This document shows, piece after piece, positions 6,189-32,638 of a DNA stretch of 64,000 bases. The position numbers and the translations under genes were made by a program. The stretch lies in the IMG/VR virus record IMGVR_UViG_3300049460_000128, positions 1-64,000 of that record. The stretch is one strand, 5' to 3'. Position 1 is the first letter of the stretch; the number at the start of each line of letters is the position of its first letter. The notes below the pieces were generated by a model. The model searched no databases and was not told the DNA's origin. It saw only the letters and a program-made list of their open reading frames with translations.

Positions 6189-6247
6189 ACAAGTGTCTCC
6201 TGTTATTTTCCACCAATATAGCATGATATGGTATTTAGAAGACAAAT

Positions 6248-6275
6248 AAAAAAGCCCGCCGAAGCGAGCTTTTTT
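6248..6275 (-). terminator. intrinsic terminator ending the tmRNA operon
   Basis: AAAAAAGCTCGC-TTCG-GCGGGCTTTTTT. Confidence 0.85.
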
Positions 6276-6280
6276 GAGAC

Positions 6281-6606
6281 TTGGATGATGAGGTATGTCT
6301 CTACCCCCACCGTTTAGGCTGCTACAGCCTGACGGAACGAAGAATCGTTTGCATTTACAACGTGCCGACTTTTATTTTCGTGAATCATCGACTTTCACGT
6401 GTTGTCATCTTCGGCTTATTCACCCTGTCGAAACCAGGTCAGGCCCATCATATAAGATTCTCTCGCTTACGTCTCGCGGGATACTGCGCTTTATCCTGAT
6501 AGTGGCCAGCGAAGTTTATCATGCGCTGCTGGTCTAACCTACCGAAAATCTATATGGTGGACCTGTGGGGAATCGAACCCCAGTCCAGAATGCCTCTACG
6601 TCCAAA
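6281..6606 (-). ncRNA. ssrA: tmRNA, circularly permuted (two-piece)
   Basis: Acceptor piece ...GGACTGGGGTTCGATTCCCCACAGGTCCACCA ends at 6555; coding piece starts GGGCCTGACCTGGTTTCGAC at 6446; G3:U70 pair; tag ORF 6352-6314 = ANDSSFRQAVAA*. Confidence 0.92.
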
Positions 6607-6668
6607 TCTGTCAGTTGCCTGACCACAACAATGTAATGCGCCTATCAGGCGGGGTAAGCCCCGTCATC

Positions 6669-10933: not shown

Positions 10934-11087
10934 AATGTGGGTTGGAGTAACTTGGCGATTTAATCCGGGACTCTGCATTCTTGCCCGACTTCATGTTTCG
11001 CCACCTGAAAGCTAGTTTGTCTAGTCCTCACCACGGAGTCAATAGTACAGCAAACCACGGAAGTTCGCAACACTATTGACACCACAT

Positions 11088-11939
11088 TCACTTGCGGGGT
11101 TTCTTTATTGCACTGAAAAGTAGCATCAATGCAACACCGGTAAGGAACATCACCCAACTTTCAGGCTCTGGAACAGGAGTCGTAATGGGTGGAGTGACGA
11201 TTGGCGGAACAATCGGTGGAGTAATTACAATGCAGCAACCACCGCCACCACCACCGCCATTGTCGATCGGGCTCCACGGAGTGAATCCGTGCCAACCGTT
11301 ACCGCCAGGATTCACCAATGAATTGTTGGGCTCACCTGAGCCAGTAGTGATACTCCCTGGGGCAACATTTGACGCACCACCACCCCCGCCTCCGCCACCA
11401 CCTTCAGTTGGTTCTGCGGGTTGTTCAGCTTGTGCTTGAGCAACTTCAGCAGTTTCACCACCACCTTTATGTGAACCAGTAGTTACCTGGGTTTCCGGCA
11501 ACCGCTTCACACGGCTGATATTTTGGCAAATAGTTGGTACCAGGATACAAGTTTCGCCCTCGCAGTACACCAATGCTTCCTCTTTACGAGTGGGTGACCA
11601 TTTGTCACGAGTTGTTGCCAGACAGATTTGCGGCTTAGCACTCTTGCCACCAAAGTGCATATCGGTGATGGTCGACTCATATGCGTGGATGCCAGTAATT
11701 CGATCTTTCGTGATGGTCACGACTTCATCGAACTGCTTTTTCTCCAAACGCTGTTTGAACTTAGCCCGCAGTTCAGGCGAAAGATCACGATAATGATCAA
11801 TCGCATTCGAGACGGCGCCCTTGTAGGGATTGACACCTGGGTTGTCCCACGAACAGGTGTCAAGTATTACCGCTTGGGAACTGGCCATGGTCCCCAGGAA
11901 CAAAAGTCCCATCAATGCCTTAAAAAGTTTCATATACAA
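11088..11939 (-). CDS. MHFG-type PEP-CTERM surface protein
   Basis: Signal peptide, CSWDNPG, DMHFGG, Gly-rich linker, C-term VPEPESW + TM helix + KKPRK. Confidence 0.85.
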   Translation of the reverse strand: MYMKLFKALMGLLFLGTMASSQAVILDTCSWDNPGVNPYKGAVSNAIDHYRDLSPELRAKFKQRLEKKQFDEVVTITKDRITGIHAYESTITDMHFGGKSAKPQICLATTRDKWSPTRKEEALVYCEGETCILVPTICQNISRVKRLPETQVTTGSHKGGGETAEVAQAQAEQPAEPTEGGGGGGGGGASNVAPGSITTGSGEPNNSLVNPGGNGWHGFTPWSPIDNGGGGGGGCCIVITPPIVPPIVTPPITTPVPEPESWVMFLTGVALMLLFSAIKKPRK

Positions 11940-12040
11940 TTCCTCAATTGGTTGCCCTATATATCATATGGCGCAATCGAATGGTATATTAAAATTATGC
12001 TAATTCATAAAACCAAATCATCAACTATTTGATATTTGCC

Positions 12041-12069
12041 TTGATCTGGCAACCAAATGAATGTATCAT
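12041..12069 (+). promoter_or_regulatory. sigma70-type promoter with operator motif
   Basis: TTGATC-17-TATCAT; spacer ends CAACCAAATGAATG. Confidence 0.7.
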
Positions 12070-12091
12070 GTATTCATTAACTGGAGGGAAT

Positions 12092-12520
12092 ATGAAAACC
12101 ATCTCGGCAACGGTAACTCAATATCAAGCAGATGACGGCACGCCATTCGACAGCGAAGCGGCATGCAAGCTGTACGAGGATGAACTGAAACGCACCTCCT
12201 ACTGGATCGTGTACTTCAATCCAGACCTCACGGAAGGGCGGGGCACGCAGTATTCCACGGCATTCAGTGTGGTCACGCCATACGGCAAGAGTGATGCGCA
12301 AATGTGGATGACGGACTACTGCATGCAGAAACATGGTCGCCCAGTGGCATTCGTGCAAGGCGCATCGCCATGCCCAAACTGGACTCTGAGTGAGCTCGAT
12401 CGCAAAGCATACGAAGCCCACAAGGCCCGTACTCCTGATCGTTACAACCAGCACACGGTTGGCGTGTTGAAGCTGAAAGGTGACGACAAGCTGCACTACG
12501 CCTTGACCTTGGTCAAATAG
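12092..12520 (+). CDS. hypothetical phage protein
   Basis: GGAGG RBS, MKTISAT...YQADDGTPFDSEAACKLYE...PDLTEGRG. Confidence 0.8.
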   Translation: MKTISATVTQYQADDGTPFDSEAACKLYEDELKRTSYWIVYFNPDLTEGRGTQYSTAFSVVTPYGKSDAQMWMTDYCMQKHGRPVAFVQGASPCPNWTLSELDRKAYEAHKARTPDRYNQHTVGVLKLKGDDKLHYALTLVK

Positions 12521-12524
12521 TCGT

Positions 12525-12552
12525 AAAAAAGCCCCTAGGCTAGGGGCTTTTT
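12525..12552. terminator. bidirectional intrinsic terminator
   Basis: AAAAAAGCCCCTAG-G-CTAGGGGCTTTTT between convergent units. Confidence 0.85.
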
Positions 12553-12555
12553 GTT

Positions 12556-12709
12556 TGGTGGCGAGAGGAGGGGTCGAACCTCCAATGTGCTACACATTGA
12601 CAAATATGCGTGCTCGAGGATCCGGATCCAATTGGCCGCCCTACACTCGTCAACTTAGAACACTCTCCAGCTCATCGGCTGGCGTATCTACCAATTCTAC
12701 TACCCCGCC
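12556..12709 (-). ncRNA. tRNA frame with ~80-nt variable-region insert and 6-nt anticodon loop
   Basis: GGCGGGG/TCTCGCC-A-CCA, D arm with AATTGGTAGA, CCAGC-CGATGA-GCTGG, GGAGG-TTCGACC-CCTCC. Confidence 0.75.
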
Positions 12710-12712
12710 TAA

Positions 12713-13062
12713 AATGTAATGGTGGATGACCGTTGGTGTGCTATTACGCCCAATGCTCAACGGGTCTTGTACGACATCGCGCTTACTCTAATCCCTTTAC
12801 CCTCAGCGCTTACCTAGGGGCCGTTATCCTTCGGCATCCTGTAGTCATGGGCTACGCCCCATAACATGATGACCAATTTCCTGCCAGCTGGGAAATTGTT
12901 GCCATCTTATCGTACAAACTGTACTTGTCCTTCCCCGGTGGATTATGCGCGATGATTGCCACCATCTGAAGCTGGGATCGCTTCCGCCCTTATCCACTTT
13001 GCAACTCTTTAAAGGATGGCTGCTTCTAAGCCCACCTTCCAAAAGTCATCCACCATTACATT
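12713..13062 (-). ncRNA. structured RNA containing a split mimic of 23S rRNA H43/H44 (GTPase-associated centre)
   Basis: Perfect 18-bp terminal helix; GGCTTAGAAGCAGCCATCCTTTAAAGAG (13032-13005) and GCGTAATAGCACAC (12749-12736). Confidence 0.85.
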
Positions 13063-13063
13063 C

Positions 13064-13280
13064 ATGTGCTTTGTTGGGCACCATCCGCCACCCCCATCGG
13101 GTCAGCATCCACAGCGGGATTACTAGGGACTCGAACCCTTCTTCGCTTGACTGTACGGGCCAAGCTAGTACGCTATCATGAACCATCTGCATCACTTACC
13201 GCGAATAGGCGATGTTTCCCGTTCATGCTTCCCAAATTAATGGTTTTTCACGTAGACGACTGATGTCCAACAAAGCACAT
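13064..13280 (-). ncRNA. structured RNA with T-loop hairpin
   Basis: 14-bp closing helix ATGTGCTTTGTTGG/CCAACAAAGCACAT; AGGG-TTCGAGT-CCCT; starts just after promoter. Confidence 0.7.
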
Positions 13281-13287
13281 ACATGAC

Positions 13288-13316
13288 ACTATACTGCTGG
13301 TTCAGCTACCAGTCAA
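13288..13316 (-). promoter_or_regulatory. sigma70-type promoter of ncRNA operon
   Basis: TTGACT-17-TATAGT. Confidence 0.75.
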
Positions 13317-13340
13317 GCATTCTTTTCTGGTAGCTGAACC

Positions 13341-13700
13341 TTAAATGTCCCACGGATTAGCCCAACGCTGATATTTGCGATCATCGATGAAGTCCCGCAG
13401 GTCTGGCTCATAGTCGGGATTCTGGAGGTGACGCACCAGTTCGTGCTCGTTATGAGCCCTTGCCGAATTCTTGCCACCCTTCACAGCATACCAACCATAG
13501 TATTTCTTGCTGTCGCGATGAAAGCGCCAGTAGCCTTCATCCAACTCTTTACCAGTCTTCCAAATGCGTGGGAAAGCCCACACGGTATCATGGCGACCGG
13601 AATTACCATTCCACTCATCTGGGATGGTGGTCAGGTACCTTTTAATGTTGCTGCTGCGCCCGATGCGCTTTTCGCCTTTACGGCGGATGGTTCGACTCAT
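13341..13700 (-). CDS. small basic hypothetical protein
   Basis: MSRTIRRKGEKR...; GGAG RBS inside a hairpin. Confidence 0.75.
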   Translation of the reverse strand: MSRTIRRKGEKRIGRSSNIKRYLTTIPDEWNGNSGRHDTVWAFPRIWKTGKELDEGYWRFHRDSKKYYGWYAVKGGKNSARAHNEHELVRHLQNPDYEPDLRDFIDDRKYQRWANPWDI

Positions 13701-13723
13701 GTTAGATCTCCAGTAATGGTAAC

Positions 13724-13762
13724 CTAACGAGTCGATTTCTCCTTGTATGCGTACACTTTCAT
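13724..13762 (-). CDS. putative 12-aa leader peptide
   Basis: GGAG RBS, MKVYAYKEKSTR-TAG; stop overlaps hairpin covering next RBS. Confidence 0.45.
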   Translation of the reverse strand: MKVYAYKEKSTR

Positions 13763-13808
13763 GTTTCGCTCCAGTTTGCCGCCAATCAGGCTAGCAGGTT
13801 AAAAAAAT

Positions 13809-13942
13809 GCACTGACTTTATCCTCCGCGGCGTATCAATCCTTTCGGACTAACCCACGAATGTGGGTGATCGGCGCGCTGCTATGGTCAACCCATAGTGA
13901 GGTGCTACAAGTCTAGCTTGGGTGGCATAACCTCCCCAGTGC
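13809..13942 (-). ncRNA. candidate structured RNA
   Basis: GCACTG/CAGTGC closing stem followed by U-tract; multiple hairpins. Confidence 0.55.
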
Positions 13943-13947
13943 CAAAG

Positions 13948-14074
13948 TGGATGCTGAATTTACCGCGTATCGACCTAGCTGGCTTACGGGGAGCAACTCA
14001 GTTACTCGCCACCACTGGTCACGTGGTGCAACAATTCTAGCATGGGGCAAACACTACGTCAGCCCCTGCATCCA
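13948..14074 (-). ncRNA. candidate structured RNA
   Basis: TGGATGC/GCATCCA closing stem right after promoter; multiple hairpins. Confidence 0.55.
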
Positions 14075-14083
14075 ACATGTTCA

Positions 14084-14112
14084 ATAATACGGCAAATGGT
14101 TCATTGAGTCAA
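14084..14112 (-). promoter_or_regulatory. sigma70-type promoter
   Basis: TTGACT-17-TATTAT. Confidence 0.7.
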
Positions 14113-14168
14113 GTGAATATTTCAACAATGTTGATAAGATGTTGCTCTGGTGCTGAATAGCCAGTCTA

Positions 14169-14579
14169 ATGGCAATTTTAGGAACTATCATGACTCCCAT
14201 CATTATCTTACTGGTGCTCATCCAGTTGAAACACTACCTCTGCGACTTTCCGCTGCAAACCCAAAATCATCTATCCACGAAGGGCATCTACGGCAATCTG
14301 GGTGGTATCAGCCACAGCGTCAATCATGGACTTGGTACCTATGTGGTGTTTGCCATCATGGGGCTTGGTATGGTTGAAAACAATCTGCAACTAGCGATCA
14401 TCATGGGTTTGATCGATGCTGTGATTCATTATCACATTGACTGGATCAAGACTCGCTTCGGACAAAAGGACATAACGAAAAAATCGTTCTGGAATCAACT
14501 GGGGCTGGATCAATTGGCACATCAACTCACGTATGTGCTGATCATTGGCTTGTATTTTAACGAGATCTTGAAATCCTGA
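14169..14579 (+). CDS. DUF3307-like membrane protein
   Basis: KHYLCDFPLQ...HSVNHG...HYHIDWIK...GLDQLAH. Confidence 0.8.
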   Translation: MAILGTIMTPIIILLVLIQLKHYLCDFPLQTQNHLSTKGIYGNLGGISHSVNHGLGTYVVFAIMGLGMVENNLQLAIIMGLIDAVIHYHIDWIKTRFGQKDITKKSFWNQLGLDQLAHQLTYVLIIGLYFNEILKS

Positions 14580-15061
14580 TTCTGGCTATTTCTGACTAGA
14601 AATCAATCAAGTTTCAAAATACCTACCTGGAGTTTACGACATCAGGTGTTCGATTTCTGACATAATTCTTCAAGAAATGATATTTCGATGATCCTCATCT
14701 TCCTCAAGAAGATCTCTATCATTGGTTATAGTTCGTGAAGACTATAAGGGGTTTGGTATATGGCTAGTATTCCCATATGGCGTATGTGTGATGCCTTAGT
14801 GAGTTGTAGTTGGTTGGTTACCTATCGTAGTTTCAATATCCACCTTATGGGTTTTGTTGGAGTTCGGGATATCAATTATGCTATTCGAGTTTTCTATAAG
14901 GGGTTTGAGGATCGGTTGAGTGGTAGTGGTATTTGTGTAAGGAGTTGTGTATGGGCGGGTGGTCCTTCGTGTGAGTTGATTGTGAGTTTGTGTGGTAGTT
15001 CGAGTATATTGAGTGATGACGAGTGGATTCGGGTAGTATTTTTATTGGGGCGGTAAGAGAT

Positions 15062-31743: not shown

Positions 31744-32638
31744 GAAGACTCAGCACAGCCTCCAGATTTCGTGCGTGAACCCATTCATCCAATGTTGCCG
31801 TCTGTGGGTCAAGCAAGTATGCATCAAAGTGCTGTTGTATTGATGCCAACGCAGCATATGACGCTCCAACGATATCTTGGGTAGAATCTCGTGTGTGTAT
31901 GTCCATGACCGTCATATCGCGCATATACGACGATCTCATCAGTTTGCGACGAAGTCCTTGATTGTGAGTATTAAGTGTGGTGAAGAATGCCCGGTCCACA
32001 AGCTTCAACTGCCAGCCACTGTTATGACGGAATACCAATCCTTCAATTTTAGTTGGACCAAACATCGAAGTTCGTCCACGCACCAGTTTATCCAATAGAG
32101 TTTCGTAATCGTATGCTTCAAGTGACTTGAAGGTATCTAGCCACTCAGATGATGGAATCTCTTTCAGATCGGTCATCTGCCAATCAGTAGTTCTGGTCTT
32201 CTTAATATTGCGAATACCATCATCGGTGCTGGGATATTGGAAGTTTTTGACTTGACCTTCAGCATAGAATCCAATGTCATCAGGGTGAAATACCACGATG
32301 CGATTAACTACCTGGTCGTACTGAATTGTATTGGGATGATTGACTGAAAGGATTTCAGCTTTGATCTCAGCATTGGTGCCGTATGTTGCCACCAATTGAT
32401 CCTCGATTGATTTCAGGAAGGTATGTGCTTCGCGGAAGTCAGTAGTCCAGAAATTGAAATCCCAGCCAGTTGGTTCGTAGACATTGAAACGACCTTGACG
32501 AATTGAAACTTCGCCTTCTTCGATATCAATTTGAAATGTAGAGCCATCCACTTTTTCCTGACATATGAATTCTTCAGGATGTTCAAGGAACAGTTGTTGG
32601 CGCTTTTTGGAGAGTTTGTCGTAATGTAAAATGCTCAT
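31709..32638 (-). CDS. RNA ligase-like covalent nucleotidyltransferase
   Basis: EKVDGS (motif I), IEGLVF (motif IV), LKLVD (motif V). Confidence 0.65.
   Translation of the reverse strand: MSILHYDKLSKKRQQLFLEHPEEFICQEKVDGSTFQIDIEEGEVSIRQGRFNVYEPTGWDFNFWTTDFREAHTFLKSIEDQLVATYGTNAEIKAEILSVNHPNTIQYDQVVNRIVVFHPDDIGFYAEGQVKNFQYPSTDDGIRNIKKTRTTDWQMTDLKEIPSSEWLDTFKSLEAYDYETLLDKLVRGRTSMFGPTKIEGLVFRHNSGWQLKLVDRAFFTTLNTHNQGLRRKLMRSSYMRDMTVMDIHTRDSTQDIVGASYAALASIQQHFDAYLLDPQTATLDEWVHARNLEAVLSLRDQLNGIINGR

What the first reader, a model, noticed from the sequence alone, without database searches (positions are those of the whole stretch)
12556..12709. tRNA frame with ~80-nt variable arm and 6-nt anticodon loop, next to the rRNA mimic
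Seen: encoded CCA and normal D and T arms. The anticodon hairpin CCAGC-CGATGA-GCTGG has a 6-nt loop without U33, and an ~80-nt insert includes a TTGAC/GTCAA helix. It begins 3 nt after the closing helix of the GAC mimic, so RNase P cleavage would also define the mimic's 3' end. This is a third distinct insertion site among the tRNA frames, which argues against a single mobile intron.
Basis: partly seen in the sequence, partly recalled or inferred. Interest (0 to 1): 0.7.

Follow-up and report, generated by a model that had tools for sequence, protein, structure and literature searches.

The report
Anticodon-less tRNA-like RNA with giant arm
Right after a ribosomal-RNA look-alike, a jumbo phage encodes an RNA that keeps the full shape and the leucine-type marks of a transfer RNA but has no usable anticodon and an 83-base extra arm, so it most likely works as a processing handle and stable scaffold, not as a decoder.

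Summary
A 154-nt tRNA frame lies on the minus strand at 12709-12556 (Rfam tRNA 31.5 bits, cut-off 29). It has a 7-bp acceptor stem, a leucine-type D arm, a canonical T arm, A73 and an encoded CCA. A 16-nt hairpin with a 6-nt loop stands where the anticodon arm should be, and the variable region is 83 nt.

A second assembler gives the same sequence. A low-coverage relative in another metagenome keeps the 5' 30 nt unchanged. It has one compensatory pair change in the hairpin stem and a different loop, so the loop is not an anticodon.

The frame is the last module of a unit that runs from a promoter-like site to a terminator: a structured domain, the 23S GAC-like domain, 2-3 nt, the tRNA frame. 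In other phages the same GAC-like RNA sits inside tRNA arrays, with a tRNA starting 14-32 nt after its last conserved motif.

Best reading: a non-decoding class II (Leu-type) tRNA-like scaffold. RNase P cleavage at its G1 would set the mimic's 3' end and release a stable RNA carrying a long arm. Processing and charging are inferred, not shown. Similar leucine-type frames with 75-105-nt middles are common in viral metagenome contigs. Novelty: new variant of a known kind. Interest: moderate to high.

The parts
13288..13316 (-). Sigma-70-like promoter match (TTGACT, 17 nt, TATAGT). The predicted start is near 13281, at the foot of the first RNA domain.
   Evidence: consensus match only, 10 of 12 positions
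13064..13280 (-). RNA domain 1, closed by a 14-bp helix (13280-13267 / 13077-13064). It contains a T-arm-like hairpin.
   Evidence: 766-nt fold, z -6.6; sequence
12712..13063 (-). 23S GAC-like domain, closed by an 18-20-bp helix (13063-13044 / 12731-12712). H43-like core at 13041-13004; H44-like GCGUAAUAGC motif at 12750-12734.
12710..12711 (-). 2-nt linker (3 nt if the terminal G-U pair is not counted) between the mimic's closing helix and tRNA position 1. This is the predicted RNase P site, 5' of G12709.
   Evidence: cleavage is inferred
12556..12709 (-). The tRNA-like frame, 154 nt including the encoded CCA.
12684..12700 (-). D arm: 3-bp stem GUA/UAC and the 11-nt loop GAAUUGGUAGA, which is identical to that of canonical phage tRNA-Leu genes.
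12667..12682 (-). Hairpin in the anticodon-arm position: 5 bp and the 6-nt loop CGAUGA. The relative has a G-C to U-A double change in the stem, and its loop is CCCUGG.
12584..12666 (-). 83-nt variable region. It folds into one imperfect hairpin that starts 3 nt after the anticodon-position stem and ends 3 nt before the T stem.
12567..12583 (-). T arm GGAGG-UUCGACC-CCUCC.
12556..12559 (-). Discriminator A73 and the encoded CCA.
12525..12552 (.). Bidirectional intrinsic terminator hairpin with A and U tracts. It begins 3 nt after the CCA and also ends the convergent ORF 12092-12520.
   Evidence: z -4.1

Best explanation
The element is a non-decoding, class II (leucine-type) tRNA-like RNA that the phage uses as a tRNA scaffold.

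Shown:
- It keeps every part of a tRNA that processing enzymes and LeuRS read: a 12-bp acceptor/T stack, the D-loop/T-loop elbow, A73 and CCA.
- The anticodon arm is reduced to a plain hairpin whose loop is free to change.
- The variable arm has grown into an 83-nt hairpin.

Inferred:
- The unit 13281 -> ~12525 is transcribed as one RNA.
- RNase P cuts 5' of G12709. That single cut creates the 3' end of the GAC-like RNA, 2-3 nt beyond its closing helix.
- RNase E and exonucleases trim the terminator back to the encoded CCA.
- The released ~154-nt RNA folds into an L shape that protects it and displays the long arm as a payload.
- It is probably a substrate for host LeuRS, because bacterial LeuRS needs neither the anticodon nor the variable arm. 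It cannot decode.

What the payload arm binds is unknown.
For: Structure:
- Rfam tRNA score above its cut-off, with the insert placed in the variable region and a loop one base short.
- The MFE is the full cloverleaf, alone and in the 766-nt context (z -6.6 for the unit).
- The D arm best matches tRNA-Leu among 195 phage tRNAs (10 of the top 20 matches are Leu, against 23 of 195 overall).
- All E. coli-type Leu determinants are present: A73, the D-loop G18 G19 and A20a context, U8:A14, U54:A58, and a U before the T stem. The review PMC9976931 states that the anticodon and the long arm are dispensable.

Selection:
- The relative in runs X2/X3 has 0 changes in the 5' 30 nt but 5 changes in the next 11 nt.
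- Those changes include a compensatory G30-C40 to U-A pair and 3 of the 6 loop bases. The neighbouring ORF differs at 8 of 92 positions.

Processing context:
- The GAC-like RNA is embedded in same-strand tRNA arrays in other phages.
- A tRNA or tRNA frame starts 14-32 nt after its H44-like motif in 7 distinct loci, the window included.
- A promoter-like site sits at the start and a terminator 3 nt after the CCA.
- RNase P separating polycistronic tRNA units (PMC2190699) and RNase E removing terminators next to CCA (PMC5291269) are established.

Generality:
- Other anticodon-less frames exist in this window (10933-10829, with a GAAA tetraloop) and in a relative phage (L114, with a CCGG-UAGC-CCGG hairpin and a D-loop insert).
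- 73 of 113 IMG/VR pattern hits are single Leu-type frames with 75-105-nt middles, about a dozen of them with the same layout of short hairpin plus long arm.
Against: - No transcript, end-mapping or charging data exist; no RNA run was listed.
- Fold z-scores for the frame alone are weak (-1.3; the arm -2.0).
- The comparative support for the hairpin rests on one 151-nt contig at depth ~3.4 from one sample that is filed twice. The relative's variable arm and T arm were not seen.
- The promoter is only a consensus match, and jumbo phages often use their own polymerases.
- If processing were the only role, a minihelix would do. The conserved elbow, the CCA and the long arm are not explained by processing alone, so the 'payload' part is a guess.
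- No partner protein is encoded nearby.
Confidence: 0.55

Rival explanations
1. It is an active tRNA-Leu mimic. The RNA is leucylated, or at least bound by tRNA-handling or tRNA-attacking proteins. It acts as a decoy or sponge, for example against acceptor-end or elbow-recognising defence toxins, or by titrating LeuRS, or as a dedicated non-ribosomal Leu donor. The processing role is secondary.
For: The full Leu identity set, the encoded CCA and the intact elbow are kept while the decoding parts are lost. Most members of the IMG/VR class are solitary (55 of 73 have no canonical tRNA within 1.5 kb) and keep A73, which a pure punctuation role does not explain.
Against: There is no charging evidence. 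The 70%-complete genome has no phage LeuRS, L/F-transferase, Ro60 or CCA-adding enzyme. No known defence system is tied to tRNA-Leu here. The 83-nt arm could sterically hinder LeuRS or EF-Tu.
Confidence: 0.2
2. It is a decaying tRNA-Leu pseudogene. A once-functional phage tRNA-Leu lost a loop base and picked up junk in its variable arm. It has no function beyond, perhaps, accidental processing.
For: The genome has only two canonical tRNAs (both CAT), whereas relatives have 27-55, so tRNA loss happened in this lineage. Fold z-scores are weak.
Against: All 20 helix pairs of the four arms are standard or G-U, and all tertiary and identity bases and the CCA are intact. The 5' 30 nt are invariant in the relative while the adjacent ORF has diverged, and a compensatory pair preserves the hairpin stem. 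The arm is a continuous hairpin seated exactly as a class II arm. Several frames of the same design exist.
Confidence: 0.13
3. It is an interrupted true tRNA. The long segment is an intervening sequence that is spliced out to give a canonical decoding tRNA.
For: Some phage tRNA-Leu genes fetched here do have clear anticodon stems and normal variable arms split by 47-62-nt inserts in the anticodon loop (L184, L186, L201). There is also a sub-threshold RNA-ligase-like ORF at 32288-32575.
Against: Removing the arm still leaves a 6-nt loop (405 of 580 ARAGORN-called deletion variants). The remaining variants scatter over more than 15 anticodons. 83 nt is far too short for a group I intron, and there is no Rfam intron or ribozyme hit. 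No RtcB was found. The relative's loop differs at 3 of 6 bases.
Confidence: 0.04
4. It is a sequencing or assembly artefact, either an indel in the loop or a chimeric insert.
For: The data are a single metagenome source at ~12x depth.
Against: Logan's independent contig is identical over 1.1 kb. The relative from a different habitat shows the same hairpin length. The palindromic sites in the arm (GGATCC twice, CTCGAG, CAATTG) are ordinary in this genome (42, 24 and 209 copies), so it is not a linker.
Confidence: 0.02

Closest known systems
Bacterial and phage class II tRNA-Leu
   Same: 7/5 acceptor/T stack, 3-bp D stem, identical 11-nt D loop, A73, encoded CCA, and an extra arm that emerges between the anticodon stem and the T stem.
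   Different: The loop has 6 nt, lacks U33 and carries no Leu anticodon. The extra arm is 83 nt, against roughly 12-20 nt in the 23 tRNA-Leu genes fetched here. It cannot decode.
tRNA-like processing signals: plant mitochondrial t-elements (PMC1920247), the MALAT1 mascRNA, and mitochondrial tRNA punctuation (the last two from my own knowledge)
   Same: A tRNA-shaped element placed directly 3' of another functional RNA, so that RNase P cleavage makes that RNA's 3' end. There is no decoding role.
   Different: Those elements are eukaryotic or organellar and usually degenerate. This one is in a phage, keeps a complete identity set and CCA, and carries a very large arm.
Non-decoding aminoacylatable tRNA mimics: the tmRNA tRNA-like domain and plant-virus 3' TLSs (from my own knowledge; the tmRNA review PMC3985003 is listed)
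   Same: An acceptor/T-arm mimic with CCA, no anticodon, processed by RNase P, and with large extra RNA attached.
   Different: tmRNA has Ala identity (G3-U70), no true D stem, and its insert replaces the anticodon arm and holds an ORF. Here the pair is C3-G70, the D arm is complete, the identity is Leu-type and the insert sits in the variable arm.
Engineered tRNA scaffolds for recombinant RNA (Ponchon and Dardel; PMC3753655)
   Same: A tRNA frame is used to get correct processing and nuclease resistance for an embedded hairpin payload.
   Different: The scaffold is man-made and the payload replaces the anticodon stem. Here it is natural and the payload is in the variable arm.
Bacterial and phage Y RNA-like YrlA (PMC4201824)
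   Same: A non-coding RNA with a tRNA-like D/T elbow, found in some phages.
   Different: There is no YrlA Rfam match and no Ro60/TROVE gene. In YrlA the ends lie in the Ro-binding stem, not in an acceptor stem with CCA.
Stable non-tRNA RNAs inside phage tRNA clusters (T4 species 1 and 2 RNAs; from memory, not checked here)
   Same: Small stable RNAs that are co-transcribed and co-processed with phage tRNAs.

Membership tests
Canonical tRNA (Rfam RF00005) | Covariance-model score at or above the gathering cut-off | tested here: met
   31.5 bits against 29
Canonical tRNA (Rfam RF00005) | 7-bp acceptor stem, D arm with G18 G19, T arm with a UUCRA loop | tested here: met
   MFE cloverleaf
Canonical tRNA (Rfam RF00005) | 7-nt anticodon loop with U33 and a conserved anticodon | tested here: not met
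   The loop is the 6-nt CGAUGA. The relative has CCCUGG. ARAGORN reports a two-base 'anticodon'.
Canonical tRNA (Rfam RF00005) | Variable region within the natural range (4-5 nt, or about 10-25 nt in class II) | tested here: not met
   83 nt. ARAGORN fails on the native sequence.
tRNA-Leu identity (E. coli type, PMC9976931) | Discriminator A73 | tested here: met
   A at 12559
tRNA-Leu identity (E. coli type, PMC9976931) | D-loop determinants (A14, A15, G18 G19, A20a) and the T-loop U54:A58 | tested here: met
   The D loop is identical to that of bona fide phage tRNA-Leu genes. The T loop is UUCGACC. The A15:U48 pairing is inferred from the U that precedes the T stem.
tRNA-Leu identity (E. coli type, PMC9976931) | Actual leucylation by LeuRS | not testable with these tools
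   Needs an in vitro charging assay or in vivo acylation mapping.
tRNA-like processing signal (t-element / mascRNA type) | tRNA-shaped element directly 3' of another functional RNA on one transcript | tested here: met
   It lies 2-3 nt after the GAC-like domain, with a promoter-like site upstream and a terminator downstream. The same arrangement with tRNAs occurs in 6 other loci.
tRNA-like processing signal (t-element / mascRNA type) | RNase P cleavage at its 5' end in vivo | not testable with these tools
   No RNA run was listed.
tmRNA tRNA-like domain | G3-U70 alanine identity, a degenerate D arm, an internal tag ORF | tested here: not met
   The pair is C3-G70 and the D arm is intact. The phage's own permuted tmRNA is elsewhere, at 6223-6647.
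YrlA / Y RNA | Rfam YrlA match and a Ro60 (TROVE) partner | tested here: not met
   No match. No TROVE in the genome.
Group I intron-containing tRNA | Intron of 200 nt or more with a group I core, in the anticodon loop | tested here: not met
   The insert is 83 nt and in the variable region. There is no Rfam intron hit at E <= 10.
tRNA-Sec | 8/5 or 9/4 acceptor/T stems, UCA anticodon, G73 | tested here: not met
   7/5 stems, no UCA, A73.
Phage Leu-type tRNA frames with 75-105-nt middle (class seen here in IMG/VR; I found no published name) | Paired 7-nt acceptor strands, Leu-type D arm, T arm, A73, and a large arm ending within 4 nt of the T stem | tested here: met
   Window frame: arms of 16 + 77 nt, 3 nt before the T stem. 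Of 66 unique class members, 46 have their last helix ending within 4 nt of the T stem, and about 12 have the same short-hairpin-plus-long-arm layout. Homology as opposed to convergence was not established.

The most novel reading that the evidence does not exclude
The frame is one member of an undescribed, widespread class of phage RNAs. These are natural tRNA scaffolds built on a leucine-type class II tRNA. The anticodon arm is lost or reduced, and a hypervariable 75-105-nt payload sits in the variable arm or in the anticodon arm. LeuRS-type identity (A73, elbow) is kept. If so, these RNAs are charged or bound like tRNA-Leu yet never decode, and they act as modular effectors: decoys for tRNA-directed defences, or carriers of protein-binding or antisense arms. 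In this phage, one of them doubles as the 3' processing cassette of a 23S GAC mimic.
Probability: 0.3. Interest if true: 0.8.

Novelty: new variant of a known kind. Interest (0 to 1): 0.62.

Why it matters
tRNA-shaped processing signals and non-decoding tRNA mimics are known, but not in this form. Here a bacteriophage RNA keeps a complete leucine-type tRNA body, drops the anticodon and carries a variable arm about four times longer than any in the canonical tRNAs compared here.

It is physically coupled to a mimic of the ribosome's GTPase-associated centre, so one RNase P cut would mature both RNAs.

Similar frames recur in this phage, in a related jumbo phage and in dozens of uncultivated viral contigs. 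Phages may therefore routinely reuse tRNA bodies as scaffolds for other RNA functions. That would change how 'tRNA pseudogenes' and 'undetermined tRNAs' in phage genomes are read. It also offers natural designs for RNA expression scaffolds. Finally, it gives simple assays for an open question: do viruses deploy chargeable but non-decoding tRNAs?

Tried and rejected
1. Close relatives by DNA:
- blastn of 11000-15000 against isolated phages found only the 37-49-nt GAC core.
- A 20-mer from the frame's 5' half has no hit in IMG/VR.
- Its single JGI metagenome hit, L030, is a chance match.

2. Relatives by flanking proteins:
- ORF 13344-13700 has none.
- ORF 12092-12517 has only 46-49%-identical homologues, in unrelated, protein-dense contexts.

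3. Transcript evidence: no RNA run was listed. Only Logan contigs could be laid.

4. Mobile-element idea: the 83-nt arm has no second copy in the genome.

5. Synthetic-linker idea: the GGATCC, CTCGAG and CAATTG sites are common in this genome.

6. rRNA-mimic idea for the arm: no similarity to E. coli rRNA apart from the neighbouring GAC core, and no Rfam hit.

7. Splicing idea: an exhaustive in-silico deletion scan gives no consistent canonical tRNA, and there is no RtcB.

8. Partner search in the 70%-complete genome: no Ro60, CCA-adding enzyme, L/F-transferase or LeuRS. Neighbouring ORFs are uninformative.

9. Conserved neighbour gene for the IMG/VR class: none.

10. One class member (L125) against isolated phage genomes by blastn: no match.

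11. Literature searches found no description of such RNAs or of the phage GAC mimic.

12. Complex prediction was not used, because jobs with RNA get no verdict.

Full report
WHAT IS THERE

The window is the first 64 kb of a 296.6-kb IMG/VR virus record. It is a jumbo phage. Its large terminase is 62% identical to that of Sinorhizobium phage Phosso, 55% to Atu_ph07 and 48% to PA5oct.

The element lies on the minus strand, sense 12709 -> 12556. Rfam's tRNA model matches 12559-12709(-) at 31.5 bits (cut-off 29). The alignment puts all extra sequence in the variable region and finds one base too few in the anticodon loop. ARAGORN does not report it.

My map of the frame:
- acceptor 12709-12703 / 12566-12560
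- U8 A9
- D stem GUA/UAC with the 11-nt loop GAAUUGGUAGA
- G at 12683
- hairpin CCAGC-CGAUGA-GCUGG at 12682-12667
- variable region of 83 nt at 12666-12584
- T arm GGAGG-UUCGACC-CCUCC at 12583-12567
- A73 at 12559
- CCA at 12558-12556

The unconstrained MFE of the 154 nt is the full cloverleaf with one long extra arm. The same fold appears when 766 nt of context are folded. The 16-nt hairpin alone has z -3.2, the long arm alone about -2.0 and the whole frame only -1.3. Thermodynamics alone is therefore not decisive.

IS IT AN ARTEFACT?

No. Logan's independent contig from the likely source run (rhizosphere metagenome, depth 12) is identical over 12300-13400.

A freshwater metagenome (runs X2 and X3, one data set filed twice) holds a relative at depth ~3.4. 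One 151-nt contig equals 12680-12819 with 4 differences. Its 11 further letters read, in sense, UCCCCUGGGAU where the window has GCCGAUGAGCU.

The relative's hairpin is therefore CCAUC-CCCUGG-GAU.., against the window's CCAGC-CGAUGA-GCUGG:
- The fourth stem pair changes on both sides (G-C to U-A).
- Three of the six loop bases change.
- The length is kept.
- The 30 nt from G1 to the start of the hairpin are unchanged, whereas the nearby ORF differs at 8 of 92 positions.

The loop is not a conserved anticodon, and the frame is under constraint. This rests on a single low-depth contig.

The cluster of palindromic sites in the arm (GGATCC twice, CTCGAG, CAATTG) looked like a linker. Those sites are ordinary in this genome, at 42, 24 and 209 copies.

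WHAT KIND OF tRNA BODY?

The D arm is of leucine type. Among 195 tRNAs called in the phage loci fetched here, 10 of the 20 best matches to the frame's D arm are tRNA-Leu, against 23 of 195 overall. The 11-nt D loop is identical to that of several of them.

The discriminator is A. According to the review PMC9976931, E. coli LeuRS needs the following:
- A73
- the A15:U48 pair
- G18 G19 and A20a
- the D/T-loop contacts, including U54:A58

It needs neither the anticodon nor the long variable arm, and minimal tRNA-Leu variants lacking both arms are still charged. All the required elements are present here. The arm leaves the body exactly where a class II arm does, 3 nt after the anticodon-position stem and 3 nt before the T stem.

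The '~80-nt insert' is therefore better described as a four- to five-fold expansion of the natural class II variable arm. It has no second copy in the genome, no Rfam match and no similarity to E. coli rRNA.

COULD SPLICING RESTORE A DECODER?

I deleted every segment of 40-100 nt between the D arm and the T arm (1891 variants) and ran ARAGORN.
- 580 variants were called.
- 405 of them keep the native hairpin and are reported as a tRNA of unknown type with a two-base anticodon, that is, the 6-nt loop.
- The rest scatter over more than 15 anticodons.

There is no RtcB and only a sub-threshold RNA-ligase-like match. Splicing is unsupported.

CONTEXT

- A sigma-70-like match (TTGACT, 17 nt, TATAGT) ends at 13288.
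- The 766-nt fold (z -6.6) gives three modules, each closed by its own helix:
  1. Domain 1, 13280-13064.
  2. The GAC-like domain, 13063-12712, closed by 18-20 bp.
  3. After 2-3 nt, the tRNA frame.
- A hairpin with flanking A and U tracts starts 3 nt after the CCA (z -4.1). It also terminates the convergent ORF 12092-12520.
- The GAC-like core (13041-13004) matches 23S rRNA in all 5426 E. coli genomes at 88-94% and Rfam's LSU model at positions 1183-1230.
- Its 28-nt core occurs exactly in 25 IMG/VR contigs and, nearly exactly, in phages XacN1, pf16 and UNO-G1W1.
- In pf16 and UNO-G1W1 it lies between annotated tRNA genes on the same strand. ARAGORN finds same-strand tRNAs next to it in most IMG/VR contexts.
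- In 7 distinct loci, including the window, a tRNA or tRNA frame begins 14-32 nt after the family's downstream GUAAUAG (H44-like) motif. In several loci an upstream tRNA ends about 20 nt before the core.

The family is evidently matured by the tRNA-processing machinery. In this phage the downstream 'tRNA' is the anticodon-less frame. RNase P separating polycistronic tRNA units (PMC2190699) and RNase E removing a terminator next to CCA (PMC5291269) are established in E. coli. Their action here is inference.

OTHER FRAMES OF THE SAME DESIGN

The whole genome has only two canonical tRNAs (both CAT, at 255936-256092) and a permuted tmRNA. Relatives carry 27-55 tRNAs.

The window holds further tRNA-like frames on the minus strand:
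- 10933-10829: a weak tRNA-Sec-like match of 24.2 bits. Its MFE is a cloverleaf with a CUAG-GAAA-CUAG hairpin in the anticodon position and a 41-nt extra arm, z -2.3.
- 10826-10666: a paired acceptor, G73 and CCA.
- 10626-10453.

Related cases elsewhere:
- In a related 417-kb phage, one frame has a 39-nt insert in the D loop and a CCGG-UAGC-CCGG hairpin instead of an anticodon arm (L114).
- In another lineage, a 105-nt frame with 49 nt in place of the anticodon arm follows the GAC-like RNA by about 20 nt (L018).

A WIDER CLASS

- 73 hits (66 unique) are single frames of 128-158 nt with paired acceptor strands, a Leu-type D arm, a T arm and, mostly, A73 followed by non-CCA tails.
- Their 74-104-nt middles are unrelated between contigs even where the frame ends are identical.
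- Conversely, one middle occurs with different, compensating acceptor stems (for example GGGTAAG/CTTATCC against GGAGAAG/CTTCTCC).
- ARAGORN with introns allowed assigns them almost every amino acid.
- Only three (L184, L186, L201) look like tRNA-Leu with a 44-62-nt insert (ARAGORN intron lengths) in the anticodon loop and a normal extra arm.
- The middle folds into one or two arms. In 46 of 66 the last helix ends within 4 nt of the T stem, and about a dozen share the window's layout of short hairpin plus long arm.
- Only 18 of 73 have a canonical tRNA within 1.5 kb.
- There is no conserved neighbour gene.
- Rfam sees them only as weak tRNA hits of 32-47 bits.
- The same pattern in 185,579 prokaryote species genomes gave 16 frames in 121 matches. 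Most of those are tandem tRNA-Leu fragments, and about 7 are real.

The class is therefore phage-enriched. I found no paper describing it. Whether the window's frame is homologous to this class or convergent with it is open.

MECHANISM

Shown:
- the anatomy
- its constraint in one relative
- the modular promoter-to-terminator unit
- the family-wide embedding of the GAC-like RNA among tRNAs

Inferred:
- one transcript
- an RNase P cut 5' of G12709, which makes the mimic's 3' end
- 3' trimming to CCA
- a stable L-shaped RNA displaying an 83-nt arm
- probable recognition by LeuRS, with no decoding

The payload's target is unknown.

I put 0.55 on this scaffold-plus-processing reading. The rivals, in order, are:
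- an active Leu mimic or decoy, 0.2
- a decaying pseudogene, 0.13
- a spliced decoder, 0.04
- an artefact, 0.02

COMPARISON AND NOVELTY

The element works like a t-element or mascRNA (a tRNA-shaped 3' processing signal) and like an engineered tRNA scaffold. It resembles tmRNA and viral TLSs in being a non-decoding tRNA mimic.

It is not a canonical tRNA, because the loop and arm criteria fail. It is also not tmRNA, YrlA, tRNA-Sec or a group I intron host.

I rate it a new variant of a known kind. If the class-level reading holds, it is considerably more interesting.

Noticed in passing
window 13063-12712 (-); loci L001-L003, L005-L029: The 23S GAC (H43/H44)-like RNA is a widespread phage family that is absent from Rfam 15. 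Its 28-nt core occurs exactly in 25 IMG/VR contigs and, nearly exactly, in XacN1, pf16 and UNO-G1W1, usually inside same-strand tRNA arrays. A variable domain of about 90-300 nt separates the H43-like hairpin from a GUAAUAG (H44-like) motif. In XacN1 it lies next to a 2'-5' RNA ligase gene.
   Followed up: partly
window 13280-13064 (-): A further structured RNA domain upstream of the mimic. It is closed by a 14-bp helix that abuts the mimic's closing helix with no spacer, and it contains a T-arm-like GGGUUCGAGUCCC hairpin. There is no family match.
   Followed up: partly
window 10933-10453 (-): A tandem run of three more tRNA-like frames with large inserts: 10933-10829 (GAAA tetraloop in place of the anticodon loop, 41-nt extra arm), 10826-10666 (G73-CCA) and 10626-10453. 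None is called by ARAGORN.
   Followed up: partly
loci L123-L235 (IMG/VR); L285, L311, L318, L342, L347, L352, L355 (genome contigs): A large, apparently undescribed class of phage Leu-type tRNA frames (128-158 nt, A73, mostly no encoded CCA) with hypervariable 74-104-nt middles. Frames and middles appear to be shuffled independently between contigs.
   Followed up: partly
L114 108-210 (-), L113 132-254 (+), L018 13640-13745 (-): tRNA frames with inserts in other jumbo phages: a D-loop insert plus a tetraloop hairpin (L114), a 52-nt stretch where the model has 3 positions in the anticodon loop (L113, 58.8 bits), and 49 nt replacing the anticodon arm directly after a GAC-like RNA (L018).
   Followed up: partly
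G000 whole genome; window 6223-6647 (-): The 297-kb genome has only two canonical tRNAs (both anticodon CAT, at 255936-256092), whereas relatives have 27-55. It encodes a permuted (two-piece type) tmRNA with the tag ANDSSFRQAVAA, which matches the betaproteobacterial model.
   Followed up: no
G000 whole genome: CTGCAG and GTGCAC are completely absent (0 copies, about 61 expected for each), and CTTAAG is nearly absent (7 against 82 expected). This suggests strong restriction-site avoidance.
   Followed up: no
L002 (UNO-G1W1), about 1.05 kb downstream of the GAC core; record annotation tRNA-Asn 69536-69621: An 86-89-nt 'tRNA-Asn(GTT)' has a Leu-type D arm (AAATTGGTAGATAC) and the length of a class II tRNA. 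This is an odd pairing of body and anticodon.
   Followed up: no
window 32288-32575 (-): A sub-threshold RNA-ligase (PF09414) match, 21.7 bits against a cut-off of 27, inside a 321-aa open frame.
   Followed up: no
L158 576-626 (+): A DUF2693-FD RNA (Rfam RF02926, 59.9 bits) lies about 80 nt upstream of one of the long Leu-type frames. This hints that part of the class comes from Bacteroidota phages.
   Followed up: no
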